Sequence record: LR756504.1
DNA length: 64,000 nt
Direction: 5' to 3' (one strand)
Shown here: piece after piece, positions 3,401 to 21,257 of the stretch
How positions within the stretch are numbered: the stretch's first letter is position 1
Layout: the number at the start of each line of letters is the position of its first letter
The notes under the pieces: generated by a model
What the model was told of the DNA's origin: nothing
Seen by the model: only the letters and a program-made list of their open reading frames with translations
Databases searched by the model: none
Made by a program: the position numbers and the translations under genes

Positions 3401-4378
3401 ATGTCATTTATGAAACAAGATTATTACAACATTTTAGGTGTTGATAAAAACACTTCGCCAGAAGAATTAAAAGCAGCTTATAGAAAAAAAGCAAAAGAAC
3501 ATCATCCAGACAAAGGTGGTGATGCGGAACAATTTAAAATTATCAATTCTGCATATGAAACTCTCTCTGATCCACAAAAAAGGAGAGAATATGATAACCC
3601 GAATCAATTTTCAAATTTCCAAGGTTCTCCTTTCGGTCAAGAGTTTAATTTCGATTTCGATTCAATATTTAATCAATTTAATTTTGGTGGACATAGAAAA
3701 CAAGAATTTAGAGAAGATTTAGATATAAGATTAACTGTAGATATACCGTTTAAAACTATTTACCAAGATAAACCATTAGAAATAAAATACTATAAAAATA
3801 CACCATGTTCTAAATGTAATTATACAGGTGTTGAAGAAAGTGATGATTCTGCTGATTGTTTACATTGTGATGGTAAAGGACATAGTACAAAATTTGGAGG
3901 AAATAAAACAACTTGTAATTATTGTCATGGTTCAGGTAAAATTCATACAAAGGCATGTTCTCAATGTGATGGTAATAAAGTAGAATCTAAATTAGAAACT
4001 ATTACAATGGACAATGTATTTATATTAGGTGAAGAACCACAAAGGATGGCATATAGAGGTAGTGGACACTTTTCTAGATATTATCCTGGTAGAAGAGGTG
4101 ATTTAATAATTTTATTAAACCCTATAGTAGATGGAAAATATTTAAGACAAGGTGTTAATTTATTACACCAATTGGATATAGATTATAGAACAGCAATTGA
4201 AGGTGGTGAAATTGAGTATACGCATCTTGATGACAAAATTTATAAAATAAGAATTTCTGAAAAATCTAATAAAGGAACTAAACTAAAAATGACAGGAAAA
4301 GGATTATTACAAAGAGATAAAAAAACAAGAGGTGATTTAATAATTGAATTATCTATAATTATAAATTATGCAATTTAA
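3401..4378 (+). CDS. dnaJ: DnaJ (Hsp40) chaperone
   Basis: J-domain ([11 protein letters not shown] motif), G/F region, four CxxCxGxG-type zinc motifs, C-terminal GKG...RGDL substrate domain. Confidence 0.95.
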
Positions 4379-10744: not shown

Positions 10745-11563
10745 TTATTTAATTACGTCTTTTCCTAATTCTATCATTCTTTTAAAAACTGCATCCTTAT
10801 CATTTGGTAAAGTACCATTTACAATTTCATCTTTCAACTTTTTCTTGATAATTCCGATTTCTCTACCTGGTTTTAGATTAAAATAGTCCATTATCTCTTG
10901 ACCAGAAACAGGTGGCTCAAATGTACGAACTTTATCGGCTTCTTCTAAAGCTATCATTTTAGATTTTAGTACATCAATACTTTTAATATTACTTTGTTTC
11001 CTCTCTTCATTCTTTGTTGTCATATCACATTTAGCGAAGAGTAGTAAATCATCCAAATCATCACCAATATCTAATTTAAATCTCCTAAGAGCAGAATCAG
11101 ATACATTAGGGATACATAATACTTTAACTTGACCATGTAAATTAATTAATTTCTTTACATAGTCTATCTTATCCATTGGTAAACTTAAACGTTTGAAAAT
11201 GTTATCAATCATTCTAGCACCAATTTCTTCGTGTAAATGGAATGTCCAACCTAAAGATTTATCATATCTTTTGGATTTAGCTTTTCCAATATCATGTAAT
11301 ATAGAAACACAGATTAACCAAGGGTTATCTGTCATATTTCTTGTATTTCTAACAACTTTTATAGTATGCCAAAAATTGTCTTTATGGCCATTATTACCCA
11401 CCCTTTCAACTCCCTTTAAAGCAGTTAATTCGGGTAATAGATAATCTAATACCCCCATTTCATTTAGTTTTTCTAAATCTTCCGCAGGAGTATTTGAATG
11501 TAAAATGTTCAAAAAAATCTTAGTTTCCTCTTTAAATGATTCAAATGTCATAAAATATTTCAT
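10745..11563 (-). CDS. HD-domain protein resembling the C-terminal half of CCA-adding enzyme/poly(A) polymerase (no nucleotidyltransferase head)
   Basis: YLLPELTALKGVE, HKDNFWHT, LHDIGK, TFHLHEEIGA, PPVSGQEIM...LKPGREIG; N-terminal MKYFMTFESF tag. Confidence 0.8.
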   Translation of the reverse strand: MKYFMTFESFKEETKIFLNILHSNTPAEDLEKLNEMGVLDYLLPELTALKGVERVGNNGHKDNFWHTIKVVRNTRNMTDNPWLICVSILHDIGKAKSKRYDKSLGWTFHLHEEIGARMIDNIFKRLSLPMDKIDYVKKLINLHGQVKVLCIPNVSDSALRRFKLDIGDDLDDLLLFAKCDMTTKNEERKQSNIKSIDVLKSKMIALEEADKVRTFEPPVSGQEIMDYFNLKPGREIGIIKKKLKDEIVNGTLPNDKDAVFKRMIELGKDVIK

Positions 11564-11591
11564 AAACTATATATACAAATTTACTAATTTT

Positions 11592-11623
11592 TTTGCATTT
11601 CTGCAAATTTTATGTTATTTTTG
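11592..11623 (+). promoter_or_regulatory. Bacteroidota sigma-A-type promoter
   Basis: TTTG(11592)-N20-TATTTTTG(11616). Confidence 0.75.
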
Positions 11624-11646
11624 TTGTTCATAGTTAAAATAATTAT

Positions 11647-12189
11647 ATGAAAGCACCAATGTTCCGTAGTAGTGGAGATTTTCAGCGAGGAAATCATAAT
11701 ACAACAAATCGTAAAAAAAGAATACATTCTTTAATGTCACCTTTACCTTCAAAGAAAACAATAATTAAGATAGGTAATTTTCTATTTAACACAATATTAT
11801 TAATTTCTTTTGCATGGCTTCATTATTGGTCAATAGGTAATTTATTTTTCAAAGATATAAAATCTACTGAACTTGTATATGGAACAATTCATAAAGTTTT
11901 TGAAAGACCTATGCATAATTCGAACACGGGTGATCAAAATGGTGTTGAAAAAATAATAGTGATGAAATATGCAGATGGATATGAAGAGAAAAATGTAAGC
12001 GATAAAACTTTTTATAAAGCTGTTGCTGGTGAAAGAATGTGTTTTGAAAAACATATTAATGATGGTAAATTATTTCTATCATTTCTTGGTATGATAGTAA
12101 TTGTTGTAGTTTATATAATAGTTATTGAAACACATTCAGATAAAATAAAAAAAGCATTTAAATATTTGTGGGACAAACTACCTGACTAA
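11647..12189 (+). CDS. Membrane protein
   Basis: Two hydrophobic segments. Confidence 0.55.
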   Translation: MKAPMFRSSGDFQRGNHNTTNRKKRIHSLMSPLPSKKTIIKIGNFLFNTILLISFAWLHYWSIGNLFFKDIKSTELVYGTIHKVFERPMHNSNTGDQNGVEKIIVMKYADGYEEKNVSDKTFYKAVAGERMCFEKHINDGKLFLSFLGMIVIVVVYIIVIETHSDKIKKAFKYLWDKLPD

Positions 12190-13010
12190 GTATGAAGATT
12201 AATAGAGAACATCCGCAAATAAAACTGTTTGTACAGGAAATGATTAATGAAAAAATTCCTTACTTACCCGATAAATTCGAACAAGAAGATTTTATGTTTC
12301 TTGTTATTGAACAAATGTGGAATAATAATAATTCACCACAATGTGTATCAGCGGATGGTAATGTCGTGGGTGCAAGACGAACTGAATTATTCAAAAAAAT
12401 ATTCGATTACAAAAGAATTTACTTAATTGATGAACTAACAAATGATAAACAAGATAAAAACGTTATTTAAAAGTTTTAGCTTTAGTTGTGAACATAGCTT
12501 TGTATCAGATATTCAACTCAGAATTGTTGAATGTACAAAATGTAATAAAAAATATTGGTACTCTTATGGTGATATTTATTCAAAACCTAATAAAATTCAA
12601 GAGAGAAAAAATAAAATAAAACTACTTAGTTAAGTCTTCTATTTTTATTTCTCTTAAAAGAGGTTTCAAGTCTTCATCAATATGTAGAAAAATATTTTCA
12701 AGAAGTATATGTATCTGTGATGGGACTTGTGCATGATCTCTTCTATCATAAATAAAGAAAATCATTATATCTTGATTTATACTATCAGTTAGATATGAAT
12801 ATTTAGTCTGTACTTTATATGGAATTTTTTCATATATGAAGTATTCGGAGAAAGTTTCTACATTGTTTATATACTTAAAAGTAATTGCCTTTCTTTTTAC
12901 AATATCATAAAATAATGATGGAACTCTTAATGGAGTTGTTAAGTTTTTTGTATTTTTAAGTTTAGGTTTATTAACATTTTTAATCATTTATATAATCCTC
13001 TTAAATCTCA

Positions 13011-13523
13011 TTATTCGAGATTTTCTAATTTTTTTAACAATTTGGTAATCTTACCGAGCATACCACACTGCTTTAAACCTTCGTCTATTTTACATCTAAT
13101 AAACCTTTCAGGATAACATTTTAAAGGCATATCATCTAAAATATAGAAGTTTTCTATATTATTATCATTAATGTATTTAGTAATTTCAGTGTCTCTCTTC
13201 TCAGCCATATCTTCAAATAATTCAAGTTTTCCTGAATCAAGCTTTTTATGAAATATGAAAGGAGTATATTCTGTTGGAATATGACTTACCTTATTCCATA
13301 AAAATATTTCTTGAATTTCGGGAAGAGAAAAGTGGCTTCTCCAATCAGAAGTTAATACAATATTGGTAGGAGTTAATTTTAACGCCTCATTTAATATATT
13401 AACACACTTAGGATCAAATGGATATGTAGTTCCATTGAACCAATTCTTTTTACTCCTGCTTTGTCTAAATGACCAGCTAGTTGTTATCACATCATCGATA
13501 TCTAAAAATAGAACTATCATCAC
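13011..13523 (-). CDS. HAD phosphatase (Swiss-Army-knife RNA-repair HAD type)
   Basis: FLDIDDVI motif I, VLTSDWR motif II, YILDD motif IV. Confidence 0.75.
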   Translation of the reverse strand: MMIVLFLDIDDVITTSWSFRQSRSKKNWFNGTTYPFDPKCVNILNEALKLTPTNIVLTSDWRSHFSLPEIQEIFLWNKVSHIPTEYTPFIFHKKLDSGKLELFEDMAEKRDTEITKYINDNNIENFYILDDMPLKCYPERFIRCKIDEGLKQCGMLGKITKLLKKLENLE

Positions 13524-13639
13524 TAATTATTAACGAAATATAAGTAGGAAAGTTTTGAAAATTAAAGTAGTTTAGCTATATTTAGCTTTAATTTTAATGT
13601 AAAATCAAAACTAATTGAAAATCTATTTATATAAGATAT

Positions 13640-14104
13640 ATGAAAGTATTCGGAAAAGAAAGAAATTGTATAATTCATGATGAAAACAAAGTATGTGGAT
13701 TCTTTGGTGAATATCGCTTCTTATCTAATTATGATTGGTGCGAAATACATTATGATGGATTAGTGTATTCATCTACTGAGGCTGCTTATCAGGCTGCTAA
13801 ATCATTAGATAGAGAAACTCAAATTGAATATACAAGAATGGGTCCATCGGAGTCAAAAAAAATAGCATACAAATTACCTATAAGAGAAGATTGGTATGAT
13901 ATAAGACTTGATGTGATGTATGCGGTTATTAAAGATAAATTTACACGACACGAAGAATTGAAAACTAAATTACTTCAGACGGGTGATAAATATTTAGAGG
14001 AAACTAATTATTGGAAAGATGTTTTTTGGGGTGTGTATGATAGAAAAGGTGAGAACAATTTAGGAAAAATATTAATGCGAGTTAGAGAAGAAATTAAAAA
14101 ATAG
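13640..14104 (+). CDS. NADAR family protein (YbiA/RibX-like)
   Basis: FLSNY, EAAYQAAK, LLQTG...LEETNYWKDVFWG, GENNLGKILMRVR. Confidence 0.9.
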   Translation: MKVFGKERNCIIHDENKVCGFFGEYRFLSNYDWCEIHYDGLVYSSTEAAYQAAKSLDRETQIEYTRMGPSESKKIAYKLPIREDWYDIRLDVMYAVIKDKFTRHEELKTKLLQTGDKYLEETNYWKDVFWGVYDRKGENNLGKILMRVREEIKK

Positions 14105-14674
14105 AATTATGGATATGTTGACAATCTGTATTGATGAATTAGCTCATTCTGATTATAATGACTACATAGAACAGAATTTATCTTTAGAACAATTAAAAAA
14201 TCTAACTAAATTCTTTTTTGGTTGGAAAGGAATTACTTCAGATGAATTGTGGCATATATATAATTCTGATAATAAAGAAATTATCACAAATATACCGCTC
14301 ATTAAAAGTTTTATTAAATATTGTAAAAACGAACAAGAAATTGAAAATTTAATTAGAAGTTTAGTGTGACGGTTTAATAAAAATATTAATGCTAATATGG
14401 AAACTATATTGAATTACATAGTCAATAATCGCATAGTCAATGTTGATGGTTGGTATTATTGCCAGAAAAATTGCATTGTTAGTGAACATTCGGTAGAACT
14501 TTATTTTGAAAATACAAATTCATCACTTGATTATTATATTATGATTAATTTAAGTAAACCATTTAAGTTTTCATTATATAGAGGTGAAAAAATACAGAAG
14601 AAAGCATTTCAAAAAGCTTTTTATAAAAAGTTACCAAGAAATTTAAAAATTCAAAAATTAGTAGGGGGTAGATT

Positions 14675-15037
14675 ATGATACAAATTGATTTTATCCGAGA
14701 AAATAAAGATATGATAATCGAAGAATTAAATAAAAAACATTTTCGTAATGCAAAAAAATATGTGGAAATAATTTTAGAAACCGATGCTAAGAGAATGTCA
14801 ATTCAAAAAGAATTGGACGAATCTATATTAAGAATTAACATGAAATCAAATGAAATTGAAGTTTATTTAAGTAATGGTGAAATAGAGGCAGCAGAGGACA
14901 TTAAAAATAAATCTAATATATTAGGAAAGAAGATTAAAGAATTAATTAAAGAATTGAAAGATGTTGAAGAAAAACTTAATGATAAATTAGTTAAGCTTCC
15001 TAATATACCGCACACCGATGTTCCTGACATACATTGA
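14675..15037 (+). CDS. Stand-alone seryl-tRNA synthetase N-terminal coiled-coil (tRNA-binding arm); catalytic domain absent
   Basis: MIQIDFIREN...DAKRMSIQKELD...LPNIPHTDVP matches SerRS residues ~1-115 and stops at the domain boundary. Confidence 0.85.
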   Translation: MIQIDFIRENKDMIIEELNKKHFRNAKKYVEIILETDAKRMSIQKELDESILRINMKSNEIEVYLSNGEIEAAEDIKNKSNILGKKIKELIKELKDVEEKLNDKLVKLPNIPHTDVPDIH

Positions 15038-15149
15038 ACGGGAGCGCATTAACACTTTCTATAATTATGCATCTCTTTTAGAAAATAATCAAACAGTTTA
15101 TGATGTTAAATTACCATATGCACAGGATTTTATTTAATAAATTAAAAAT

Positions 15150-15323
15150 ATGAAATTATTAAAAGTAGAATTATTATCATTATTAATTTACGTAATTTTA
15201 ACTCTACCCCATCTTAGTTATTTAATATTTGATGTTGGTATACAATATTCATTACCTGTTTGTTTATCGGTTGGTATAGTTTCAGTTATAATTGGTAATA
15301 TAATAATGTTTGATAGGAAATAA
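15150..15323 (+). CDS. Small two-TM membrane protein (not in ORF track)
   Basis: MKLLKVELLSLLIYVILTL...VSVIIGNIIMFDRK, 57 aa. Confidence 0.5.
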   Translation: MKLLKVELLSLLIYVILTLPHLSYLIFDVGIQYSLPVCLSVGIVSVIIGNIIMFDRK

Positions 15324-15334
15324 TTGATATAAAA

Positions 15335-15366
15335 TTTGGAAGTTTAATTATTTTTGTATATATTTG
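15335..15366 (+). promoter_or_regulatory. Bacteroidota sigma-A-type promoter
   Basis: TTTG(15335)-N20-TATATTTG(15359). Confidence 0.75.
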
Positions 15367-15382
15367 TGTTAAAATTAAATTT

Positions 15383-15901
15383 ATGGGATATTCAATTTCA
15401 CAAGGTAAAACATCTTTTAAAATTAAAGGTGAAAATATTCAAGGAGCATTAAAAGCTATTAAGGATTTTGCATCGAAGCGAACAAAATTAGGATATTTTG
15501 ATGCTAAAAAAATTGCAAATGCTAAAACATTAGACGAAGCGTTTAAAGAACTTTGTTGGAAATTTAAGTACACCGAAGTACAAGAAGATGTTTTAACGCT
15601 TGATAAAGCAAAAGTTATGTTAGAGTCTCTTTATGGAAAAATAAAAAATGAAGGTGCTAGTGAACAATATGCGTTGTCTTGCTTAGATGAAATTATTTCT
15701 AAATTTCCTAAAGATAAAGATGTTATAGGTATCACACAACAAGTCGAATATTTAGGCGAAGAAAGAATAATCTTTAATGTTATTGCACCATTTGTTGAAG
15801 AAGGTAGCTTTATTGAAATTGTGGGTGAGGATGGTGAAACATGGCGTTGGGTTTTTGAAGGTGGTAAGTGTGAAGAAAAGAAACCAAAAATAAAATGGTA
15901 A
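15383..15901 (+). CDS. Hypothetical phage protein
   Basis: 172-aa ORF downstream of promoter. Confidence 0.6.
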   Translation: MGYSISQGKTSFKIKGENIQGALKAIKDFASKRTKLGYFDAKKIANAKTLDEAFKELCWKFKYTEVQEDVLTLDKAKVMLESLYGKIKNEGASEQYALSCLDEIISKFPKDKDVIGITQQVEYLGEERIIFNVIAPFVEEGSFIEIVGEDGETWRWVFEGGKCEEKKPKIKW

Positions 15902-16038
15902 TATTTGTAATTGCGATTCAAGCTGGTAAATGTACAATAGAGAAAAATAAATTCAAAATAAGAAAACAATTTCAAAAAATAAACGTTTACTATAATATAA
16001 CCCATTAAGGGAACAAATAAGTTTAAATATATACTATT

Positions 16039-16128
16039 ATGAAAGCAATGATTTTAAGTTTATGTCTATCGTTATCGCTAAGTTTGCAAAAACTTGGGGT
16101 GGTAGGCGTATGTAAAGTCATTAGTTAA
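16039..16128 (+). CDS. Leu/Ser/Cys-rich attenuator leader peptide (29 aa; not in ORF track)
   Basis: MKAMILSLCLSLSLSLQKLGVVGVCKVIS*; codons 6-16 all Leu/Ser/Cys; AATATATA at 16026-16033 upstream. Confidence 0.85.
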   Translation: MKAMILSLCLSLSLSLQKLGVVGVCKVIS

Positions 16129-16187
16129 TATAAAAGACTTTAAATATCTTAAACCCTAAGTTCAAAAGACTTAGGGTTTTTTGTTTT
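16078..16187 (+). promoter_or_regulatory. Transcription attenuator: protector hairpin, antiterminator and terminator
   Basis: 1:2 CTAAGTTT-GCAA-AAACTTGG (16078-16097); 2:3 AACTTGGGGT (16091-16100) pairs with ACCCTAAGTT (16153-16162); 3:4 AAACCCTAAGT/ACTTAGGGTTT (16151-16179) plus U-tract. Confidence 0.85.
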
Positions 16188-16210
16188 ATATTAAAAAAAT
16201 TAATGAAATT

Positions 16211-16453
16211 ATGGAAAAGATAATGATTAAAGTTGTGGGTATGTTTAGTAATTGTTATATTCCTAAATATGATATGTATTTTGCTACAAAAACAGAACAT
16301 GGTAATGATGCTATAATTAAAAAAGCAAATGCAATGATAACAGTTTCAAATAATTTTAAAAACATTAATGAAGATTATAAAAGACAATTAGAAAATGAAG
16401 ATGAAAAAAATAATGAAACGAAGGCTATATTGGATGGATATAAAGTGATGTAG
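16211..16453 (+). CDS. Hypothetical protein, first gene after the attenuator
   Basis: ORF track 16181..16453; TTG 16181 lies in the terminator U-tract, so ATG 16211 is the likelier start. Confidence 0.6.
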   Translation: MEKIMIKVVGMFSNCYIPKYDMYFATKTEHGNDAIIKKANAMITVSNNFKNINEDYKRQLENEDEKNNETKAILDGYKVM

Positions 16454-16461
16454 TTTTTAAT

Positions 16462-16541
16462 GCTCCCATGGTGGAATGGCAGACACGCTCGGCTTAAAAT
16501 CGAGTGCCTTGTGCATACAGGTTCAAGTCCTGTTGGGAGTA
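16462..16541 (+). tRNA. tRNA-Leu(UAA), long variable arm, no encoded CCA
   Basis: GCTCCCA/TGGGAGT acceptor, CTCGG-CTTAAAA-TCGAG anticodon arm, GGTTCAAGTCC T-arm. Confidence 0.92.
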
Positions 16542-16554
16542 CTAATTATCACAT

Positions 16555-16640
16555 GCCCTTGTGATGTAATGCAGCCATGAACGCCTTAGAAGCGTTTGCG
16601 AAGTAATAGTAGCGTGTAGGTTCGAGTCCTACCAAGGGTA
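16555..16640 (+). tRNA. tRNA-Leu(UAG), long variable arm
   Basis: GCCCTTG/CAAGGGT, AACGC-CTTAGAA-GCGTT, GGTTCGAGTCC. Confidence 0.92.
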
Positions 16641-16649
16641 CACAATAAT

Positions 16650-16738
16650 GGAGGGAATCTGGCTGGATGAAGAGCCAATCTTGAAAATTGGTAAATCGGT
16701 GATGAACTGGTTTGTGGGTTCGAGTCCCACTTCCTCCT
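16650..16738 (+). tRNA. tRNA-Ser(UGA)
   Basis: GGAGGGA/TTCCTCC, CCAAT-CTTGAAA-ATTGG, long variable arm, GGGTTCGAGTCCC. Confidence 0.9.
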
Positions 16739-16744
16739 CAAAAT

Positions 16745-16817
16745 GGTACTATGGCCGAGTGGATATAGGCGCACGTCTGCAAAACGTGATACATCAGTTC
16801 GAACCTGATTAGTACCT
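16745..16817 (+). tRNA. tRNA-Cys(GCA)
   Basis: GGTACTA/TAGTACC, CACGT-CTGCAAA-ACGTG, U73. Confidence 0.93.
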
Positions 16818-16824
16818 CAAAAAT

Positions 16825-16911
16825 GGAGAGTAGGCAAATATTGGTTTGTTGCGGCATCCTGCTAAGATGTTCCGTATAAAAGCGGTGAGGGTTCAATTCC
16901 CTTGCTCTCCT
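16825..16911 (+). tRNA. tRNA-Ser(GCU)
   Basis: GGAGAGT/GCTCTCC, GCATC-CTGCTAA-GATGT, long variable arm. Confidence 0.92.
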
Positions 16912-16990
16912 CAAATAAAGTTCTATTGTGTAAATATTATCACACTTAAACGTAGCCGAACTTTTTGATATATAATATCAAAAAAAAGCT

Positions 16991-17695
16991 ATGAGTTTAA
17001 AAAGTGAGAAAATATTAAAGTATGCTAAAAAAATTAGAGCGATTGAATTATTAGGTGGTTGTTGCATTGAATGTGGTGTTGATAATATACATAAATTATG
17101 TTTTCACCATATAAATAGAAATGATAAAAAATTTGATATTTCGGATAAATTAGGATTAAAGTGGAACAAAATAAAAGATGAAGTTATAAAATGTGAGTTA
17201 TTATGTTTAAATTGTCATACAGAAAAACATTATAATGAAATTTCTGATAAAAAAGATATAAAAAGAAGGAGTGAAAAAAAACTATTTATTTCAATAAAGG
17301 GTGATTCATGTGAATATTGTAATTATAATAAGTGTGATGCAACATTAGAATTTCATCATCATAATGATAATAAAAATTTCTCTATAGGGAAAAAAAGATT
17401 AACTAAAAATAATTTATTATTATTTATAGAAGAAATAAACAAGTGTACTTTATTATGTAAAAATTGCCATATTCATTTACATAAAGATAGTTTCTATGAT
17501 GATAATAAAGATGAAATAATAAAAAAGAAAAATGATTATATTGATTTAAATAAAATTGATTTAGATAAATTTTTTGAATTATATAATGGTGGGTATAAAC
17601 AAGTTGAAATATCAAAACTGTTAAATTGTTCAAAAAGTAGAATCTCAGAATTAGTTTCAAAATATTTTAAAGGGAAGAATACTCAAGTGATTTAA
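16991..17695 (+). CDS. HNH homing endonuclease (two tandem CxxC-HH-CxxCH units plus C-terminal HTH) inside the tRNA cluster
   Basis: CCIECG..LCFHH..LCLNCH and CEYCN..LEFHH..LCKNCH; VEISKLLNCSKSRIS HTH; stop codon lies in the next tRNA. Confidence 0.85.
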   Translation: MSLKSEKILKYAKKIRAIELLGGCCIECGVDNIHKLCFHHINRNDKKFDISDKLGLKWNKIKDEVIKCELLCLNCHTEKHYNEISDKKDIKRRSEKKLFISIKGDSCEYCNYNKCDATLEFHHHNDNKNFSIGKKRLTKNNLLLFIEEINKCTLLCKNCHIHLHKDSFYDDNKDEIIKKKNDYIDLNKIDLDKFFELYNGGYKQVEISKLLNCSKSRISELVSKYFKGKNTQVI

Positions 17696-17763
17696 GAGGA
17701 TACATTGGAAATGTATTAGATCGGGATTAACCTGGTGCGTGAGTTTGAATCTCACTTCTTCCA
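17673..17763 (+). tRNA. tRNA-Ser(GGA)
   Basis: GGAAGAA/TTCTTCC, ATACA-TTGGAAA-TGTAT, long variable arm, T-loop TTTGAAT (non-canonical). Confidence 0.85.
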
Positions 17764-17768
17764 CAAAT

Positions 17769-17842
17769 GGCTTAGTGATGTAATTGGTAAACGTGTTCGG
17801 TTCAAACCCGAAATTTTATAGGTTCGAGTCCTATCTAAGCTA
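17769..17842 (+). tRNA. tRNA with CAA anticodon (Leu), short variable loop
   Basis: GGCTTAG/CTAAGCT, TTCGG-TTCAAAC-CCGAA, 5-nt variable loop, A73. Confidence 0.85.
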
Positions 17843-17853
17843 CAATAATAAAT

Positions 17854-17928
17854 GCCATTGTGGTGGAATTGGTTATACACACTAGTCTAAGAAACTAGGA
17901 ATTGCAGGTTCGACTCCTGTCAATGGTA
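17854..17928 (+). tRNA. tRNA with AAG anticodon (Leu, A34), short variable loop
   Basis: GCCATTG/CAATGGT, CTAGT-CTAAGAA-ACTAG, 5-nt variable loop, A73. Confidence 0.88.
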
Positions 17929-17947
17929 CTAAAAAATATATATTTAT

Positions 17948-18631
17948 GTGATAAAAAAACAAAATGTAAAGGTTAAAATAACAGATATAGCAAATAATAT
18001 TCTATTAAATGGTACTTTTAATATAAGAATTAAAAATTATAGAATTGAAATTTTAATTGATTATCCAACATTTAAAAAATTGGAATCTGAGGATAAAGGA
18101 TATATGTTATTTAATGATATGGTTATTACAATTAATGATATGAATGTAAAACCAATTATTTATTATTTTCTTTTAGAAGAACCTATATCAGATAATGATA
18201 ATAGAAGAGAATTTTTTAAATTTCTAAACGGTAGTGATAAATATATTGAAGAAGAAATGTATATAGTTCATAGAAGAAAGCGTGATTTTACAACAGAGCA
18301 TTTAACTATTGAATTTGATAATATTGAATATTCAATAATTGATTATATAATCTATTGTCAAAAAATTTACGATAAAGCAATTAGACAGAAAATTAATATA
18401 TTTAAACAAAATTTACCAGAAATAATAGAATTTAATTCTACTAAAGAAGTTCTACAACTAAATATTCGTGAAAAAGATGATGATGATGGATTTGTATTTG
18501 AATACTTAGATTGTAATAATAAATCAATTATTAATTTTGAATCGTATGATGATATTAATTCTTATGAGATTTCGGAAATATATGGTAACATGCTTAATAT
18601 AAATAAACAAGTTAAAATATTACAATTTTAG
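17948..18631 (+). CDS. Hypothetical protein
   Basis: 227-aa ORF following last tRNA. Confidence 0.55.
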   Translation: MIKKQNVKVKITDIANNILLNGTFNIRIKNYRIEILIDYPTFKKLESEDKGYMLFNDMVITINDMNVKPIIYYFLLEEPISDNDNRREFFKFLNGSDKYIEEEMYIVHRRKRDFTTEHLTIEFDNIEYSIIDYIIYCQKIYDKAIRQKINIFKQNLPEIIEFNSTKEVLQLNIREKDDDDGFVFEYLDCNNKSIINFESYDDINSYEISEIYGNMLNINKQVKILQF

Positions 18632-19068
18632 CTTGTTGGCTAAATAATTTGCAATTGTATTTTAAGTCCTCTATCATTCAAAGTATTCATGAATGTAATT
18701 ATATATTGTGCTAACATAGAGTCATCAGGATTCATATAAATGGATACTAATTCTTCTGTATTAGAACTATATTCATTATTGGTTATAAAATTTAATAGTT
18801 TATCAAAATCTGAGCGGTATTTTTTACGTCTATCGCTATCATTATACATAAAAGGAGTTCCAATAGGATTACGCAAACCAGGGTATGACATTACTTTCTT
18901 TTTTAAATAGCTAAGAAGTGATATTTTTCTATATGACATAGGAAATTTTGAAAAACCTTCTTCAAATAGATTTAAGTATTGTTCTCTTAGTTTTTCTATA
19001 TCGTTATTCATAATTTTGGGACATTTATTCCTATTTCTACTAAATGAGAATCAAAAAGTTTTAAAATG

Positions 19069-19100
19069 TTTGTATTTGTGTATATATTTTGCTATATTTG
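19069..19100 (+). promoter_or_regulatory. Bacteroidota sigma-A-type promoter
   Basis: TTTG(19069)-N20-TATATTTG(19093); explains the spurious N-terminal extension of ORF 19016. Confidence 0.75.
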
Positions 19101-19105
19101 TGTAT

Positions 19106-19687
19106 ATGAAAAAAATAAGCACATTATTTAAAAAGGATCCTAAAGATTTGGGTTTAGTAACTACTGAAGTTAGTCCTGAAAATGATTGGGTTATAAAAGG
19201 AGAAGGTATAGCAACTCGTAAATGGGATGGTATTGCTACTGCTATTATGGACGGTTGTTTATTTAAAAGGTATGATGTAAAAAAAGGAAGAACTGCTCCT
19301 ATTGGTGCTATTCCTTGTCAAGAACCTGATGAAATAACAGGACATCATCCACATTGGGTAAAATGTGAAAGAACAAATCCTGCCGATAAATATTTCTTTA
19401 TGGCATTTGATAGTTTAGAAGATAAATCTGAGGGAACATATGAATTAATTTCTGATAATTTTCAAGGTAGACATTCTAAAAAGAATCCTGAGAACATTAC
19501 AGGACATAAGCTTATTAAACATGGTGTTGAATCATTTGAATTGAATGATTTAAGCTTTGAAGCTATAAAAGCGTTTATATGCAATCCTGATAATGATGTT
19601 GAAGGTATTGTATTCCACCATAAGACTGATGGTAGAATGTGTAAAATTAAAAAATCTAATTTTGGAGTCCTTAGATATAAAATATAA
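19106..19687 (+). CDS. ATP-dependent RNA ligase-like protein (DUF5565/RLIG1-type)
   Basis: Motif I TRKWDG (KxDG), GHHPHWV, YELI, EGIVFH, KIKK at C-terminus; start moved to ATG 19106. Confidence 0.7.
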   Translation: MKKISTLFKKDPKDLGLVTTEVSPENDWVIKGEGIATRKWDGIATAIMDGCLFKRYDVKKGRTAPIGAIPCQEPDEITGHHPHWVKCERTNPADKYFFMAFDSLEDKSEGTYELISDNFQGRHSKKNPENITGHKLIKHGVESFELNDLSFEAIKAFICNPDNDVEGIVFHHKTDGRMCKIKKSNFGVLRYKI

Positions 19688-20044: not shown

Positions 20045-20344
20045 ATGGATTTATCTTTCGAAATGTTATATGATGGTATGGAGTTCTCTGCTCGAATAAA
20101 TGAAATACCTTGTGTTGGTAAAATAGCATTGTTCGATGGTGGTGTATATTTGTGTCAAAATGTAAAATCGGGGGCATATTGTGTTCGTAATAAAAGACAT
20201 GGATATGATTTTAGTTGGGCAATATTAACAAAGAATTGTTATAAGAAAACAATAGAACGTGCATTAAAACAAAATCATGTATCTGAGTTTAAAATTTTAA
20301 ATAGAAGAAAGAATAGAATAACTGAATTTTATAATAAAAAATAG
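20045..20344 (+). CDS. Paralog family A, copy 1
   Basis: LSFExLxDGxEFSA.IxxxPCxGK...LCQ...RHGY..SW; C-terminal RKNRITEF. Confidence 0.75.
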   Translation: MDLSFEMLYDGMEFSARINEIPCVGKIALFDGGVYLCQNVKSGAYCVRNKRHGYDFSWAILTKNCYKKTIERALKQNHVSEFKILNRRKNRITEFYNKK

Positions 20345-20345
20345 A

Positions 20346-20645
20346 ATGAATTTAACATTTGAGTCATTGCAAGATGGTATGGAATTTTCCGCACATATAG
20401 ATGGGACACCATGTGAAGGTAAACTTTGTATGTATGATAACCATGTCTTTTTATGTCAAGACAAGAAAGATGGTATTGATTGTAGACGTGACAGAAGACA
20501 TGGTTATCAATTTAGTTGGATAATTAAAGATCCATATAAAAAAACTACAACACTTGATCAAGCATTGAAGATACATGGTGTAACTGGATTTAAAATTCTG
20601 AATAAAAGAAAAGATAGAATAACTGACTTTTATAATCAAAACTAA
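20346..20645 (+). CDS. Paralog family A, copy 2
   Basis: Same motif set; RKDRITDF. Confidence 0.75.
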   Translation: MNLTFESLQDGMEFSAHIDGTPCEGKLCMYDNHVFLCQDKKDGIDCRRDRRHGYQFSWIIKDPYKKTTTLDQALKIHGVTGFKILNKRKDRITDFYNQN

Positions 20646-20650
20646 TTGAA

Positions 20651-20950
20651 ATGGAATTATCTTTTGAATCATTAACAGATGGTATGGAATTTTCTGCTAA
20701 CATAGATGGAATACCATGTGTTGGTAAAATTGCTGTATTTAGTGGTTTTGTATATTTATGTCAAAATAAAAAATCTGGCGCACTTTGTGGATACGATAAA
20801 AGACATGGTTATAATAGTAGTTGGATAATTAGAAATCCTGCTAAACATGTTCCATCACTATCGGTATCGTTCGCTGAAAACAGAGTAACTGAATTTAAAA
20901 TTCTGAATAAAAGAAAAGATAGAATAACTGAATTTTATAATCAACATTAA
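20651..20950 (+). CDS. Paralog family A, copy 3
   Basis: Same motif set; RKDRITEF. Confidence 0.75.
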   Translation: MELSFESLTDGMEFSANIDGIPCVGKIAVFSGFVYLCQNKKSGALCGYDKRHGYNSSWIIRNPAKHVPSLSVSFAENRVTEFKILNKRKDRITEFYNQH

Positions 20951-20951
20951 A

Positions 20952-21257
20952 ATGGATTTATCTTTCGAATTGTTATATGATGGTATAGAATATTCTGCTA
21001 ACATTGTTGGAATACCTTGTGTAGGTAAAGTTTCTATGTTTGATAACAGTGTTTATTTATGTCAAGATAAAACAGAAGGTTCTGACTGTGGTGTTGATAG
21101 AAGACATGGTTATGATTACAGTTGGGTGATTGTAGAAAGTTTGGACGATACTCCATTAGAAGAAGCATTGGATTTAAATGATGTTAAAGATTTTAAAATA
21201 ATAAATAGAGTAGCTGATAAAAGAAAAGAAAGAATAAATAAATTAAATTTTGACTAA
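20952..21257 (+). CDS. Paralog family A, copy 4
   Basis: Same motif set; RKERINKL. Confidence 0.75.
   Translation: MDLSFELLYDGIEYSANIVGIPCVGKVSMFDNSVYLCQDKTEGSDCGVDRRHGYDYSWVIVESLDDTPLEEALDLNDVKDFKIINRVADKRKERINKLNFD

What the first reader, a model, noticed from the sequence alone, without database searches (positions are those of the whole stretch)
10745..19687. tRNA heal-and-seal neighbourhood around the attenuated tRNA operon
Seen within ~9 kb: HD phosphoesterase, HAD phosphatase, NADAR, SerRS arm, attenuator, 8 tRNAs and a KxDG RNA ligase; a P-loop kinase lies at 674 and a nucleotidyltransferase at 29178. Established: T4 Pnkp plus Rnl1 repair PrrC-cleaved tRNA using kinase, phosphatase and ligase activities. 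Inference: the same chemistry split over separate genes, combining repair with inducible replacement as a translation-protection system.
Basis: inference. Interest (0 to 1): 0.7.

Follow-up and report, generated by a model that had tools for sequence, protein, structure and literature searches.

The report
Self-sensing tRNA operon with repair genes
A giant phage keeps its leucine, serine and cysteine tRNA genes behind a tiny leader gene made of exactly those codons, apparently a switch that makes more tRNA when decoding slows, and surrounds them with tRNA-mending enzymes that do not add up to a complete T4-style repair kit.

Summary
Window 10745-19687 holds a headless CCA-enzyme HD protein, a HAD_SAK_2 phosphatase, a NADAR protein, a SerRS N-terminal arm, a leader-plus-terminator element, eight tRNAs (Leu x4, Ser x3, Cys) and an RLIG1-family RNA ligase. 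All RNA-related genes I could annotate in the 64 kb sit in these 9 kb.

The heal-and-seal reading is only partly supported. The ligase family is proven to seal tRNA anticodon-loop nicks. However, no polynucleotide 5'-kinase exists in the window or the 636 kb genome. The 674 kinase looks like a nicotinamide-riboside kinase. The ligase is not linked to HAD or HD beyond a sister phage.

The inducible-replacement part is strongly supported and is the real novelty:
- The 29-codon leader (16039-16128) has a run of 11 Leu/Ser/Cys codons. Its six codon types are read by six of the operon's tRNAs.
- Modelling gives antitermination only when a ribosome stalls in that run.
- The element is nearly identical in two diverged phages.
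- Four other tRNA clusters of this genome clearly have their own cognate leader and terminator; a Lys one is weaker.
- Similar cassettes precede tRNAs in about 25 other viral contigs but not in bacteria.

The SerRS arm is a recent deletion remnant.

The parts
10745..11563 (-). Headless CCA-enzyme paralogue: body/tail plus HD phosphohydrolase domain, 272 aa, with no nucleotidyltransferase head
   Evidence: Pfam HD and tRNA_NucTran2_2. NCBIfam TIGR02692 positions 216-452 of 466, E 8.6e-39. PDB 3wfo residues 313-496. Also headless in L025 (268 aa, 90% id) and L030 (268 aa, 75% id). dN/dS 0.11.
12622..12987 (-). Unknown 121-aa protein, encoded immediately downstream of HAD on the same strand
   Evidence: No family hit. 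Sits next to HAD in L025 (88% id) and L030 (79% id). dN/dS 0.09.
13011..13523 (-). Stand-alone 'Swiss-army-knife' HAD phosphatase (HAD_SAK_2), predicted RNA 3'-phosphate remover
   Evidence: Pfam PF18143, E 1.6e-20. DxDxV, S, R and DD motifs are invariant in 10 homologues. AF2 model pLDDT 90. Foldseek gives only weak hits to cap-less HADs GmhB and Scp1.
13640..14104 (+). NADAR protein (ADP-ribose derivative N-glycosidase family), divergent from HAD
   Evidence: Pfam NADAR, E 3.5e-23. PHROG 1017, E 1.6e-36. In L030 a PARG-like macro-fold gene occupies the same position.
14109..14678 (+). Two small conserved ORFs (14109-14369 and 14397-14678). The second overlaps the start of the SerRS arm.
   Evidence: ORFs listed. 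Homologues at 90% and 82% identity in L025, and 52% for the second ORF in L030.
14675..15037 (+). SerRS N-terminal coiled-coil arm only (120 aa), the remnant of an internal deletion
   Evidence: Pfam Seryl_tRNA_N, E 4.7e-16. L025 has the full 423-aa SerRS here, 76% id over the first 117 aa. An out-of-frame relic of the SerRS C-terminus lies at 15075-15137. A 112-aa arm-only gene also exists in L030.
16039..16128 (+). Leader ORF MKAMILSLCLSLSLSLQKLGVVGVCKVIS. Codons 6-16 (16054-16086) are the regulatory Leu/Ser/Cys run.
   Evidence: Sequence. It is the longest L/S/C run in all six frames of the window; 1 of 200 shuffles reaches it. The six codon types of the run are each read by one of the operon's tRNAs, and CTT at codon 19 by a seventh. 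The leader-terminator stretch is nearly identical in L025 and L030: the 3-way alignment averages 91% column identity, and from the ATG to codon 27 only 3 columns differ.
16091..16122 (+). Region 2 of the attenuator. AACUUGGGGU pairs either with the leader run (GCUAAGUUU) or with the terminator 5' arm (ACCCUAAGUU).
   Evidence: Minimum-free-energy and constrained folds.
16151..16190 (+). Intrinsic terminator: 12-bp hairpin plus TTTTTTGTTTTAT
   Evidence: In L025 and L030 the first tRNA starts within a few bases of the T tract, leaving no room for a separate promoter.
16211..16453 (+). 80-aa ORF on a ~270-bp insertion between terminator and first tRNA. It is specific to this phage.
   Evidence: Absent from L025 and L030. 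No family hit.
16462..16912 (+). tRNA block 1: Leu-taa, Leu-tag, Ser-tga, Cys-gca, Ser-gct
   Evidence: ARAGORN and Rfam tRNA. The same anticodon set occurs in L025 and L030. No 3' CCA is encoded.
16991..17695 (+). HNH homing-type endonuclease inserted between the two tRNA blocks
   Evidence: PHROG HNH endonuclease, E 2.3e-31. The sister phage carries an unrelated 219-aa ORF at the same site.
17673..17929 (+). tRNA block 2: Ser-gga, Leu-caa, Leu-aag. The two Leu tRNAs have short variable loops.
17948..19011 (.). Two unknown genes between the tRNAs and the ligase: 17948-18631 (+) and 18640-19011 (-)
   Evidence: No family hits. 18640-19011 is conserved in L025 (78% id). 17948-18631 has a partial homologue downstream of the tRNAs in L030.
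19106..19687 (+). RLIG1-family ATP-dependent 5'-3' RNA ligase (193 aa; the true start is the ATG at 19106)
   Evidence: PHROG 14301, E 1e-61; Pfam RLIG1. 2358 homologues, mostly PF17720. Motifs I (KxDG), III, IV (EG) and V (K) align to PDB 9c6l. 56% identical to the 'RNA ligase' of Cellulophaga phage phi10:1.

Best explanation
The stretch is a Leu/Ser/Cys decoding island of a 636 kb phage that probably infects Bacteroidota.

Core: a tRNA operon whose transcription is most likely gated by a ribosome-mediated attenuator that senses the operon's own products.
1. A promoter upstream of 16039 drives a 29-codon leader. Codons 6-16 are TTA AGT TTA TGT CTA TCG TTA TCG CTA AGT TTG.
2. If tRNAs reading these codons are scarce, uncharged or cut, the ribosome stalls in the run. 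The segment AACUUGGGGU is then freed and pairs with the 5' arm of the terminator.
3. RNA polymerase reads through into the eight tRNA genes.
4. If decoding is fast, the ribosome runs on to the stop codon, the 12-bp terminator forms, and transcription ends just before the tRNAs.
5. This gives a demand-driven negative feedback on tRNA supply.

Surroundings: tRNA-maintenance genes under purifying selection.
- An RLIG1-type ligase that can reseal 5'-P/3'-OH nicks in anticodon loops.
- A cap-less HAD_SAK_2 phosphatase.
- A headless CCA-enzyme HD protein that could clean 2',3'-cyclic or 3'-phosphate ends.
- A NADAR enzyme for ADP-ribose by-products or adducts.
- The remnant of a SerRS.

These genes form a loose island, not a self-sufficient Pnkp/Rnl1-type pathway, because there is no 5'-kinase.

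Shown: gene identities, synteny, codon-anticodon correspondence, in-silico switching, paralogous cassettes.
Inferred: actual attenuation, enzyme substrates, and any coordination between repair and supply.
For: Attenuator:
- The fold z-score is -6.6.
- With a ribosome footprint placed at codons 6-14 the antiterminator replaces the terminator. At codon 16 or later, or with no ribosome, the terminator forms.
- The probability that the terminator 5' arm is sequestered before the 3' arm is made is 0.34 (no ribosome), 0.88 (stalled) and 0.29 (ribosome at stop).
- The run of 11 L/S/C codons is the longest in the window.
- Its six codon types match Leu-UAA, Ser-GCU, Cys-GCA, Leu-UAG, Ser-UGA and Leu-CAA. 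These are exactly the six anticodon species of the L030 cluster.
- The leader and terminator are almost invariant, including synonymous positions, in L025 and L030. Neighbouring proteins there are only 34-90% identical, and dS against L025 is 0.24-0.98.
- In L025 and L030 the first tRNA follows the T tract directly.

Same design elsewhere in this genome:
- IAIVEIAVIGGAEEGV precedes Glu/Ala/Ile/Val/Gly tRNAs.
- TTIIRNMNNNINRTRTT precedes Thr/Asn/Arg/Ile/Met tRNAs.
- KQDKQYQPQYD precedes Asp/Tyr/Gln(/Lys) tRNAs.
- FWHFHF precedes His/Phe tRNAs.
- The true leader-to-cluster pairing is the single best of 720 permutations.

Other phages:
- The shared 18-mer at the terminator end is followed by a tRNA within 60 nt in 26 of about 121 viral matches, against 1 of 121 bacterial matches.
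- One example is MKTIFVQQQQQQ... followed by two tRNA-Gln genes.
- 0 of 20000 permutations reach the observed cognate fraction.

Enzymes: and PMC11494293, PMC7824862, PMC9503650.

Island conservation.
Against: - There is no experimental evidence; the phage is uncultured.
- Thermodynamic modelling of the paralogous and foreign cassettes is mixed. It is clean for LSC, supportive for DYQ, HF, L080, L114 and L087, flat for EGVIA, TNRIM and L077, and reversed for the Lys leader.
- Leader ORFs at other sites were chosen among 1-3 candidate ORFs, which inflates the permutation statistics somewhat.
- In the window a 270-bp insert with an ORF separates the terminator from the tRNAs and could carry its own promoter.
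- The HAD fold search did not retrieve T4 Pnkp; the best hit had E 5.7e-3 and TM 0.41.
- HAD_SAK_2, NADAR and the HD protein have no biochemically proven RNA substrate.
- The ligase occurs alone, without any partner, in many small phages.
Confidence: 0.62

Rival explanations
1. A complete T4-like heal-and-seal pathway is split over separate genes: the 674 kinase phosphorylates 5'-OH ends, HAD and HD remove 2',3'-cyclic or 3'-phosphates, the 29178 nucleotidyltransferase restores lost bases, and the ligase seals. All act as one coordinated translation-protection system.
For: - All the needed fold classes exist within 30 kb.
- Jumbo phages are described as combining ATP-grasp ligases with kinases, SAK-type HADs, HD enzymes and Pol-beta nucleotidyltransferases (PMC7824862).
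- A paralogue of the 29178 protein lies 5 kb from the genome's second, Rnl1-type ligase.
- A homologue of the 674 kinase (67% id) is recorded on a sister-phage contig of the same length as L025's contig.
Against: - The kinase is AAA_28/NadR-like and hits no PNK family such as AAA_33 or Clp1.
- Its named homologues are called 'nicotinamide riboside kinase'.
- It matches T4 Pnkp only across the P-loop (22 aa).
- No T4 Pnkp homologue exists in the 636 kb genome.
- The kinase and the nucleotidyltransferase lie 10 kb away, on either side of unrelated genes.
- Ligase homologues in 14 other loci have no HAD_SAK_2 or kinase partner.
Confidence: 0.15
2. An accessory-gene island with no common pathway. 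Each gene acts alone: NADAR or PARG against ADP-ribosylating or NAD-derived defence signals, HAD and HD on nucleotides or alarmones, and the ligase on any nicked RNA. They sit near the tRNAs only because auxiliary early genes accumulate in the same variable region.
For: - The region is highly plastic between close relatives. SerRS is deleted, LeuRS-like, HATPase and terminase-like genes are present or absent, different mobile ORFs split the tRNAs, and NADAR is replaced by PARG.
- Phage NADAR and Macro proteins are mainly proposed to target soluble ADP-ribose signals (PMC9503650).
- HD_4-type HD genes, not HAD, accompany the ligase in L020 and L023.
Against: - HD, orf12622, HAD, an ADP-ribose enzyme, orf14397, the SerRS arm and the Leu/Ser/Cys tRNAs remain within about 7 kb in three lineages. 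This holds despite rearrangement and 34-79% protein identity.
- The HD protein is specifically a CCA-enzyme body, i.e. tRNA-binding.
- The HAD belongs to the RNA-repair-associated family.
- All RNA-related genes of the window are confined to this stretch.
Confidence: 0.2
3. The 'leader' is a real small hydrophobic peptide or a chance ORF, and the hairpin is an ordinary terminator of the upstream unit. The tRNAs are transcribed constitutively from their own promoter or by leaky read-through.
For: - The peptide is hydrophobic.
- sigma-70-like matches are uninformative in 25% GC DNA: 73 found against 72 expected.
- In the window an extra 270 bp lies before the tRNAs.
- Some foreign cassettes show no modelled antiterminator.
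Against: - Synonymous codon choice in the run is conserved across three phages.
- In L025 and L030 there is no space for a promoter.
- Independent leaders elsewhere in the genome carry the amino acids of their own tRNA clusters.
- The terminator-then-tRNA juxtaposition is phage-specific.
Confidence: 0.08

Closest known systems
Leader-peptide (ribosome-mediated) transcription attenuators of amino-acid operons (trp, his, leu, thr, ilv, pheA) and of pheST
   Same: - A short leader ORF with a run of regulatory codons.
- A 1:2 / 2:3 / 3:4 alternative-helix layout.
- An intrinsic terminator directly before the regulated genes.
- Stalling at hungry codons gives read-through.
   Different: - The regulated genes are tRNAs themselves, cognate to the regulatory codons. 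The loop therefore senses decoding capacity rather than amino-acid synthesis.
- Up to six different codon types, for three amino acids, are mixed in one run.
- A phage genome carries a family of such cassettes, one per tRNA cluster.
- There is no Rfam family for it, and no paper was found in the held library.
T4 Pnkp + Rnl1 repair of PrrC-cut tRNA-Lys
   Same: An ATP-dependent KxDG RNA ligase that seals anticodon-loop nicks, together with a DxDxT-type HAD phosphatase, in a phage that also carries tRNAs.
   Different: - The ligase is RLIG1-type and lacks the Rnl1 C-terminal tRNA-binding domain.
- The phosphatase is a stand-alone SAK-type HAD, not fused to a kinase.
- No polynucleotide kinase was detectable in the genome.
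- The genes are not a conserved pair.
- The genome has a separate Rnl1-type ligase 330 kb away.
Jumbo-phage RNA-repair gene sets described by Iyer, Anantharaman, Krishnan, Burroughs and Aravind (PMC7824862) and Iyer, Burroughs, Anantharaman and Aravind (PMC9503650)
   Same: The same combination of phage tRNAs with ATP-grasp ligases, stand-alone 'Swiss-army-knife' HAD, occasional HD phosphatases, NADAR/Macro enzymes and CCA-type enzymes.
   Different: - Here the ligase is the RLIG1 family.
- The CCA-type protein has lost its catalytic head.
- HAD is paired divergently with NADAR (or PARG in a relative), rather than with a sirtuin or KptA.
- The set surrounds an attenuator-controlled tRNA operon.
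RLIG1 / C12orf29 RNA ligases (human RLIG1, Yasminevirus RLIG1, PDB 9c6l)
   Same: Minimal nucleotidyltransferase-only ligase. Motifs I, III, IV and V are conserved, and the protein matches Pfam PF17720.
   Different: It is much shorter (193 aa against 277-325 aa) and belongs to a phage clade of about 185-195 aa proteins with 2358 detected members. The activity of this protein is untested.
Phage tRNAs as replacements for host tRNAs depleted or cleaved during infection
   Same: A phage-encoded tRNA cluster that could substitute for host isoacceptors. This idea is summarised in PMC9503650.
   Different: Supply appears to be regulated by demand through a cis-acting sensor rather than being constitutive.

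Membership tests
Ribosome-mediated leader-peptide attenuator | Short translated leader ORF containing a run of regulatory codons | tested here: met
   A 29-codon ORF at 16039-16128 with 11 consecutive Leu/Ser/Cys codons. This is the longest such run in the window; 1 of 200 shuffles reaches it. Translation itself is not testable here.
Ribosome-mediated leader-peptide attenuator | Intrinsic terminator between the leader and the regulated genes | tested here: met
   A 12-bp hairpin plus T tract at 16151-16190. In L025 and L030 it abuts the first tRNA.
Ribosome-mediated leader-peptide attenuator | Mutually exclusive antiterminator whose formation depends on ribosome position in the run | tested here: met
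   Constrained folding gives the antiterminator with the A site at codons 6-14 and the terminator otherwise. 5'-arm sequestration is 0.88 when stalled, against 0.29-0.34 otherwise. Results for paralogues are mixed.
Ribosome-mediated leader-peptide attenuator | Regulatory codons correspond to the function of the regulated genes | tested here: met
   The six codon types of the run are each read by one of the operon's tRNAs, and CTT at codon 19 by a seventh. Four clear cognate cassettes, plus a weaker Lys one, occur elsewhere in the same genome, and others in viral contigs.
Ribosome-mediated leader-peptide attenuator | Read-through increases when cognate charged tRNA is limiting | not testable with these tools
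   This needs reporter or in-vitro transcription-translation assays.
T4-type heal-and-seal tRNA repair system (Pnkp + Rnl1) | ATP-dependent RNA ligase with KxDG adenylylation motif | tested here: met
   RKWDG aligns to the catalytic Lys of 9c6l. Motifs III, IV and V also align.
T4-type heal-and-seal tRNA repair system (Pnkp + Rnl1) | HAD (DxDxT) 3'-phosphatase / cyclic phosphodiesterase acting on RNA ends | tested here: inconclusive
   The HAD_SAK_2 family is matched and its four motifs are present. The fold search found only weak cap-less HAD matches, and T4 Pnkp was not in the top 50. The substrate is untested.
T4-type heal-and-seal tRNA repair system (Pnkp + Rnl1) | P-loop polynucleotide 5'-hydroxyl kinase | tested here: not met
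   The only Walker-A ORF in the window (674-1222) is AAA_28/NadR-like, and its named homologues are 'nicotinamide riboside kinase'. No T4 Pnkp homologue was found in the 636 kb record at tblastn E<=0.01.
T4-type heal-and-seal tRNA repair system (Pnkp + Rnl1) | Healing and sealing genes co-occur across relatives | tested here: inconclusive
   They are together in the window phage and its sister L025. In the third lineage the ligase is on a different contig (L023) from HAD and HD (L030). HAD is absent near the ligase in 14 other loci.
RLIG1 (PF17720) 5'-3' RNA ligase | Profile match above the curated cut-off and conserved nucleotidyltransferase motifs I, III, IV and V | tested here: met
   26.2 bits against a cut-off of 25. 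PF17720 is precomputed on most of the listed homologues. phmmer to 9c6l gives E 1e-4 with the motifs aligned.
RLIG1 (PF17720) 5'-3' RNA ligase | Joins 5'-phosphate and 3'-hydroxyl RNA ends after auto-adenylylation | not testable with these tools
   Shown for human, Yasminevirus, bacterial and 'C. phage' members only (PMC11494293).
Class II CCA-adding enzyme | N-terminal Pol-beta nucleotidyltransferase head (PolyA_pol, PF01743) | tested here: not met
   The protein starts within the RNA-binding neck/body, and only model positions 216-452 of 466 are matched. A complete 388-aa CCA enzyme without HD is encoded elsewhere, at record 107701-108867.
Seryl-tRNA synthetase | Class II catalytic core (tRNA-synt_2b) | tested here: not met
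   Only Seryl_tRNA_N is present. The core is deleted relative to the L025 SerRS, and an out-of-frame C-terminal relic remains.
HAD_SAK_2 (PF18143) | Profile match and the four HAD catalytic motifs | tested here: met
   E 1.6e-20 (74 bits against a cut-off of 27.5). D7, D9, S58, R109 and D129-D130 are invariant.
NADAR (PF08719) | Profile match above cut-off | tested here: met
   83 bits against a cut-off of 35. NCBIfam riboflavin-intermediate N-glycosidase domain, 64.6 bits (below its 73.7-bit cut-off), and NADAR anti-phage protein, 49 bits (cut-off 240).

The most novel reading that the evidence does not exclude
Large phages of Bacteroidota-like hosts control their tRNA genes with a previously undescribed class of cis-regulators. 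These are leader peptides built from the codons read by the tRNAs that follow, so each tRNA cluster is switched on when, and only when, the cell's capacity to decode those codons drops. The drop could come from codon-usage mismatch, host shut-off or anticodon nucleases. In this island the sensor is physically combined with tRNA end-repair enzymes, giving a supply-plus-repair module for class II (Leu/Ser) and Cys tRNAs.
Probability: 0.55. Interest if true: 0.88.

Novelty: new variant of a known kind. Interest (0 to 1): 0.68.

Why it matters
If the leader works as modelled, this is a direct feedback sensor of decoding capacity wired to tRNA genes. It is a regulatory logic not described for tRNA operons in the held literature.

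What it would explain:
- Why tRNAs in huge phages are grouped by amino acid.
- Why aaRS genes sit beside the clusters.
- How a phage avoids over- or under-producing tRNAs while host tRNA pools are collapsing or under nuclease attack.

Practical consequences:
- The cassettes are short, modular and easy to test with reporters.
- They could serve as codon-specific translation-stress sensors.
- They are a simple sequence signature for mining phage genomes.

For the repair genes, the result is sobering. The neighbourhood fits the already published picture of jumbo-phage RNA-repair sets and lacks a kinase, so it should not be annotated as a complete Pnkp/Rnl1 equivalent.

Tried and rejected
1. Single-protein scans of IMG/VR with HAD, the SerRS arm and HD found only the same phage.
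2. A gapped DNA pattern for the RNA switch found only the same genome, in both the viral and the metagenome collections.
3. Single-sequence AlphaFold of the 674 kinase failed (pLDDT 42), so there is no fold-level test of the kinase.
4. The high-confidence HAD model (pLDDT 90) gave only weak PDB matches, so no structural link to T4 Pnkp could be shown.
5. Split CCA enzyme idea: that the 29178 nucleotidyltransferase is the missing head of the HD protein. Rejected as unsupported. It hits no PolyA_pol or RlaP family, and a full CCA enzyme exists elsewhere.
6. Stop-codon recoding was considered because of the genome type. Genes are contiguous under code 11, so it was not pursued.
7. The SerRS arm as a purpose-built tRNA-Ser chaperone was downgraded. 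The sister phage has the full enzyme and the window keeps a frame-shifted relic. However, an arm-only gene in L030 keeps the idea alive.
8. The sigma-70 promoter scan is uninformative in 25% GC DNA.
9. The Lys 'leader' (MRTILIIKKKK...) is weak. It has only four Lys codons in an AT-rich genome, and the modelled logic is reversed.

Full report
WHAT THE WINDOW IS

Window 10745-19687 is 100% identical to LR756504.1, an unannotated 636,363-bp 'uncultured phage' assembly. The window is the last 64 kb of that record. It has 25% GC and contains no N. Genes abut one another under the standard code.

CHECK OF THE OBSERVATION

All the listed features are real.

- 10745-11563 (-) carries HD and tRNA_NucTran2_2. 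It matches the C-terminal half (positions 216-452 of 466) of the CCA tRNA nucleotidyltransferase model at E 8.6e-39. It also matches residues 313-496 of the Aquifex A-adding enzyme. It lacks the catalytic head.
- 13011-13523 (-) is HAD_SAK_2, E 1.6e-20. The DxDxV, S, R and DD motifs are invariant among 10 homologues.
- 13640-14104 (+) is NADAR.
- 14675-15037 (+) is only the Seryl_tRNA_N arm.
- Eight tRNAs follow: Leu-taa, Leu-tag, Ser-tga, Cys-gca and Ser-gct, then an HNH endonuclease, then Ser-gga, Leu-caa and Leu-aag.
- 19106-19687 (+) is an RNA ligase.
  - PHROG 'RNA ligase' matches at 1e-61, and Pfam RLIG1 is just above its cut-off.
  - It has 2358 homologues of about 190 aa, mostly PF17720.
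  - Motifs I (RKWDG), III, IV and V align to Yasminevirus RLIG1, PDB 9c6l.
- 674-1222 is the only Walker-A ORF in 64 kb and belongs to AAA_28.
- 29178-29771 has no family, but it has an invariant GS...DxD...D signature in 15 remote homologues.
- A scan of 71 further ORFs of the window found no RNA-related family, so the clustering is not random.
- dN/dS against a sister phage is 0.07-0.27 for every gene compared.

RELATIVES

The ligase led to a sister phage, L018/L025/L026 (Logan runs SRR26541666 and SRR26541667), whose ligase is 96% identical.

Its gene order is: DnaJ ... HD ... HAD_SAK_2, NADAR, two small ORFs, a full-length 423-aa SerRS, a HATPase_c_3 protein, a 429-aa protein, the leader and terminator, five tRNAs, a 219-aa ORF, three tRNAs, a 515-aa LeuRS-like protein, a terminase-like ORF, two small ORFs, and RLIG1.

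The window's 'SerRS arm' is therefore an internal deletion. The first 117 codons align at 76% identity. A 3' relic of the SerRS gene survives out of frame at 15075-15137.

A third, more distant lineage is L030, with HD 75%, HAD 63%, orf12622 79%, orf14397 52% and arm 34% identical. It keeps these features together:
- HD.
- An arm-only SerRS gene (112 aa).
- A PARG-like macro-fold gene in place of NADAR.
- HAD_SAK_2 with its downstream partner ORF.
- A Leu/Ser/Cys tRNA cluster.

Its ligase (83% identical, same sample) is on another contig, without tRNAs.

In 14 further ligase loci I found no HAD_SAK_2. These are nine IMG/VR loci, L020, L027, L028, L029 and Cellulophaga phage phi10:1.
- tRNAs occur in only one of them.
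- One locus has a full CCA enzyme 3 kb away.
- One has RNase R and an exoribonuclease.
- One has PTH2 and a tmRNA.

So the HD - HAD - ADP-ribose enzyme - SerRS(arm) - tRNA(Leu/Ser/Cys) core is conserved, while the ligase is a looser associate.

THE ATTENUATOR

Upstream of the tRNAs lies ATG AAA GCA ATG ATT TTA AGT TTA TGT CTA TCG TTA TCG CTA AGT TTG CAA AAA CTT GGG ... TAA (16039-16128). It is followed by a 12-bp hairpin and TTTTTTGTTTTAT (16151-16190).

Structure and modelling:
- The 181-nt region folds with z = -6.6. The codon run pairs with a downstream segment (1:2), and this is followed by the terminator (3:4).
- The segment AACUUGGGGU can instead pair with the terminator's 5' arm, ACCCUAAGUU.
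- A ribosome footprint on codons 6-14 makes this antiterminator the minimum-energy fold.
- With the ribosome at codon 16 or beyond, at the stop codon, or absent, the terminator forms.
- Before the 3' arm is transcribed, the 5' arm is sequestered with probability 0.88 when stalled, against 0.29-0.34 otherwise.

Codon content and conservation:
- The run of 11 Leu/Ser/Cys codons is the longest in any frame of the window.
- Its six codon types are read by Leu-UAA, Ser-GCU, Cys-GCA, Leu-UAG, Ser-UGA and Leu-CAA. CTT (Leu-AAG) follows at codon 19.
- The leader and terminator are almost invariant in L025 and L030, including synonymous positions. The one change in the run, CTA to CTG, keeps both the tRNA and the base pair. 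Flanking proteins have diverged to 34-90% identity.
- In both relatives the first tRNA starts within a few bases of the T tract, so the tRNAs must be reached by read-through.
- The window alone has a 270-bp insertion with an 80-aa ORF at that point.

THE SAME DESIGN ELSEWHERE

I fetched the rest of the record in pieces and found 38 tRNAs in clusters sorted by amino acid. A short ORF precedes four other clusters, and a hairpin plus T run ends about 10-15 nt (about 80 nt for His/Phe) before the first tRNA:
- MKTVNTNIAIVEIAVIGGAEEGV... precedes Glu, Ala, Ile, Val, Gly, Glu.
- MTTIIRNMNNNINRTRTT... precedes Thr, Asn, Thr, Arg, Arg, Ile, Met.
- ...AKQDKQYQPQYD... precedes Asp, Tyr, Tyr, Gln (then Lys).
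- ...IFWHFHF... precedes His, Phe.

A weaker Lys case also exists. At codon level, the true pairing of six leaders with six tRNA sets is the single best of 720 permutations.

The terminator-end 18-mer GGGTTTTTTGTTTTATAT is shared by three of these cassettes.
- In IMG/VR, 26 of about 121 matches are followed by a tRNA, mostly 1-3 nt downstream, and have plausible cognate leaders. One of these 26 (L057) comes from the window's own phage.
  - MKTIFVQQQQQQ... precedes two tRNA-Gln genes.
  - A 35-codon leader samples T, R, H, V, I, N, K, P and Q before an 11-tRNA cluster of those amino acids.
- In bacterial genomes the same 18-mer, mostly found in Bacteroidota, is followed by a tRNA in 1 of 121 matches.
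- Over 12 cassettes, no permutation out of 20000 reaches the observed cognate fraction. The caveat is that leaders were chosen among 1-3 ORFs per site.
- Modelling of the RNA switch in these other cassettes is mixed.
- Rfam has no family here. Three literature searches found no description of leader-peptide control of tRNA genes.

THE REPAIR HYPOTHESIS

What is established in the literature:
- RLIG1 enzymes join 5'-P/3'-OH RNA and prefer anticodon-loop nicks.
- Viral, bacterial and a 'C. phage' homologue are active.
- The authors already predict that viral RLIG1 counters host tRNA nucleases (PMC11494293).
- Jumbo phages are already described as combining tRNAs with ATP-grasp ligases, polynucleotide kinases, stand-alone 'Swiss-army-knife' HADs, occasional HD phosphatases, NADAR/Macro enzymes and CCA or RlaP nucleotidyltransferases (PMC7824862; PMC9503650).

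The neighbourhood is therefore a new example of a published theme. What it lacks is the kinase.
- The 674 protein is NadR/AAA_28-like.
- The only names given to its homologues are 'nicotinamide riboside kinase'.
- It resembles T4 Pnkp only over the P-loop.
- T4 Pnkp has no match in the whole record.

The genome also encodes, far away:
- An Rnl1-type ligase, at record 260965-262116, next to GluRS and GrpE.
- A paralogue of the 29178 nucleotidyltransferase, 5 kb from that ligase.
- A complete CCA-adding enzyme without HD, at record 107701-108867.

None of the tRNAs here encodes CCA, so CCA metabolism is relevant to them. The HAD model is confident (pLDDT 90) but matches only cap-less HADs weakly, and not T4 Pnkp.

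The ligase can act alone on 5'-P/3'-OH nicks, such as those left by metal-dependent nucleases (my inference from the enzyme class). This fits its solitary occurrence in small phages.

MECHANISM I COMMIT TO

- The island is a Leu/Ser/Cys decoding module.
- Its centre is a demand-sensing attenuator that raises transcription of the phage's own tRNAs when the cognate codons are read slowly. I put the probability of this at about 0.65-0.8.
- Around it are tRNA-maintenance enzymes: a sealing ligase, 3'-end phosphoesterases, an ADP-ribose-processing enzyme, and synthetases in relatives.
- These plausibly act on the same tRNAs but do not form a complete, conserved heal-and-seal pathway.
- The recurrent pairing of HAD_SAK_2 with an ADP-ribose enzyme (NADAR here, PARG in L030, sirtuin in SP15-like phages per PMC9503650) suggests NAD-linked end chemistry. 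No transferase was identified.

VERDICT

Sealing and 3'-healing candidates and inducible supply are present. The kinase, the nucleotidyltransferase and a coordinated system are not.
- The repair set is a new member of a known kind.
- The self-cognate leader control of tRNA operons is a new variant of attenuation with, as far as I could find, no precedent, and it is directly testable.

Noticed in passing
LR756504.1 record coordinates ~222424-222600 (-), ~135447-135610 (-), ~401821-401995 (-), ~309669-309892 (+), ~400146-400275 (-); loci L041, L039, L045, L043: Four other tRNA clusters of the same genome are each preceded by a short ORF rich in exactly the amino acids of the tRNAs that follow, plus a terminator ending about 10-15 nt (about 80 nt for His/Phe) before the first tRNA. 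A fifth, Lys, case is weaker. The window's attenuator is one of a family of paralogous cassettes.
   Followed up: yes
L080 10553-10694 (+), L077 1565-1744 (+), L115 8896-9057 (+), L114, L087 and about 20 more IMG/VR loci: The same leader - terminator (GGGTTTTTTGTTTTATAT) - tRNA cassette occurs in unrelated viral contigs. One example is MKTIFVQQQQQQ... before two tRNA-Gln genes. In bacterial genomes the 18-mer is common, mostly in Bacteroidota, but almost never abuts a tRNA (1 of 121).
   Followed up: partly
window 14675-15137: The SerRS arm is an internal-deletion derivative of a full SerRS kept by the sister phage. A frame-shifted relic of the C-terminus remains at 15075-15137. An independent arm-only gene (112 aa) exists in L030, so stand-alone arms may be retained for a reason.
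   Followed up: yes
window 17769-17929 and 16462-16641: tRNA-Leu(caa) and tRNA-Leu(aag) have 5-nt variable loops, a class I shape that is unusual for bacterial-type tRNA-Leu. All four Leu tRNAs have a G1-U72 wobble pair and A73. None of the eight tRNAs encodes the 3' CCA.
   Followed up: partly
L030 8621-9370 (-) versus window 13640-14104: At the position divergent from HAD_SAK_2, NADAR in the window is replaced by a PARG-like macro-fold gene in a relative. This is an apparent non-orthologous displacement that links the HAD to ADP-ribose chemistry.
   Followed up: partly
window 16991-17695; L025 15310-15969: The tRNA cluster is split at the same point by an HNH endonuclease in the window and by an unrelated 219-aa ORF in the sister phage, so this is an insertion hot spot. 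Both ORFs overlap the start of tRNA-Ser(gga).
   Followed up: partly
window 16192-16452: A 270-bp insertion carrying an 80-aa ORF of unknown function separates the terminator from the first tRNA only in this phage. It might uncouple or modify the attenuation.
   Followed up: partly
LR756504.1 record 255226-262116 (L042 10226-17116) and 263081-265348: A second, Rnl1-type RNA ligase (Pfam RNA_lig_T4_1) lies beside a GluRS and a GrpE gene. A paralogue of the 29178 nucleotidyltransferase lies 5 kb upstream, so ligase and this nucleotidyltransferase family occur near each other twice in the genome.
   Followed up: partly
LR756504.1 record 107701-108867 (L039 9701-10867): A complete 388-aa CCA-adding enzyme (head, neck, body) without an HD domain. 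The window's headless HD protein is therefore an extra paralogue, as if the two halves of a multifunctional CCA/repair enzyme were kept as separate genes.
   Followed up: partly
LR756504.1 record 134959-135351 (-) and 223465-224457 (-); L025 16211-17758: aaRS-like genes sit inside or beside other tRNA clusters. A class II-like gene lies in the Thr/Asn cluster and a class I-like gene next to the Glu/Ala/Ile/Val/Gly cluster. A 515-aa LeuRS-like gene follows the Leu tRNAs in the sister phage.
   Followed up: no
window 20045-21257: Four tandem paralogous genes of 99-101 aa, 51-61% identical to one another and of unknown function, lie one gene downstream of the ligase (after orf19687). The sister phage has two.
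   Followed up: no
window 674-1222 and 3401-4378: A NadR-type (nicotinamide-riboside-kinase-like) P-loop protein and a full DnaJ. Together with GrpE elsewhere in the genome and NADAR here, they hint at phage-encoded NAD salvage and chaperone functions.
   Followed up: partly
LR756504.1 record 136122, 281045, 402360, 461088: ARAGORN reports four tRNA-like genes with abnormal anticodon loops ('???'). ORF translations just upstream of two of them look like translated tRNA sequence, suggesting further degenerate or unusual tRNAs.
   Followed up: no
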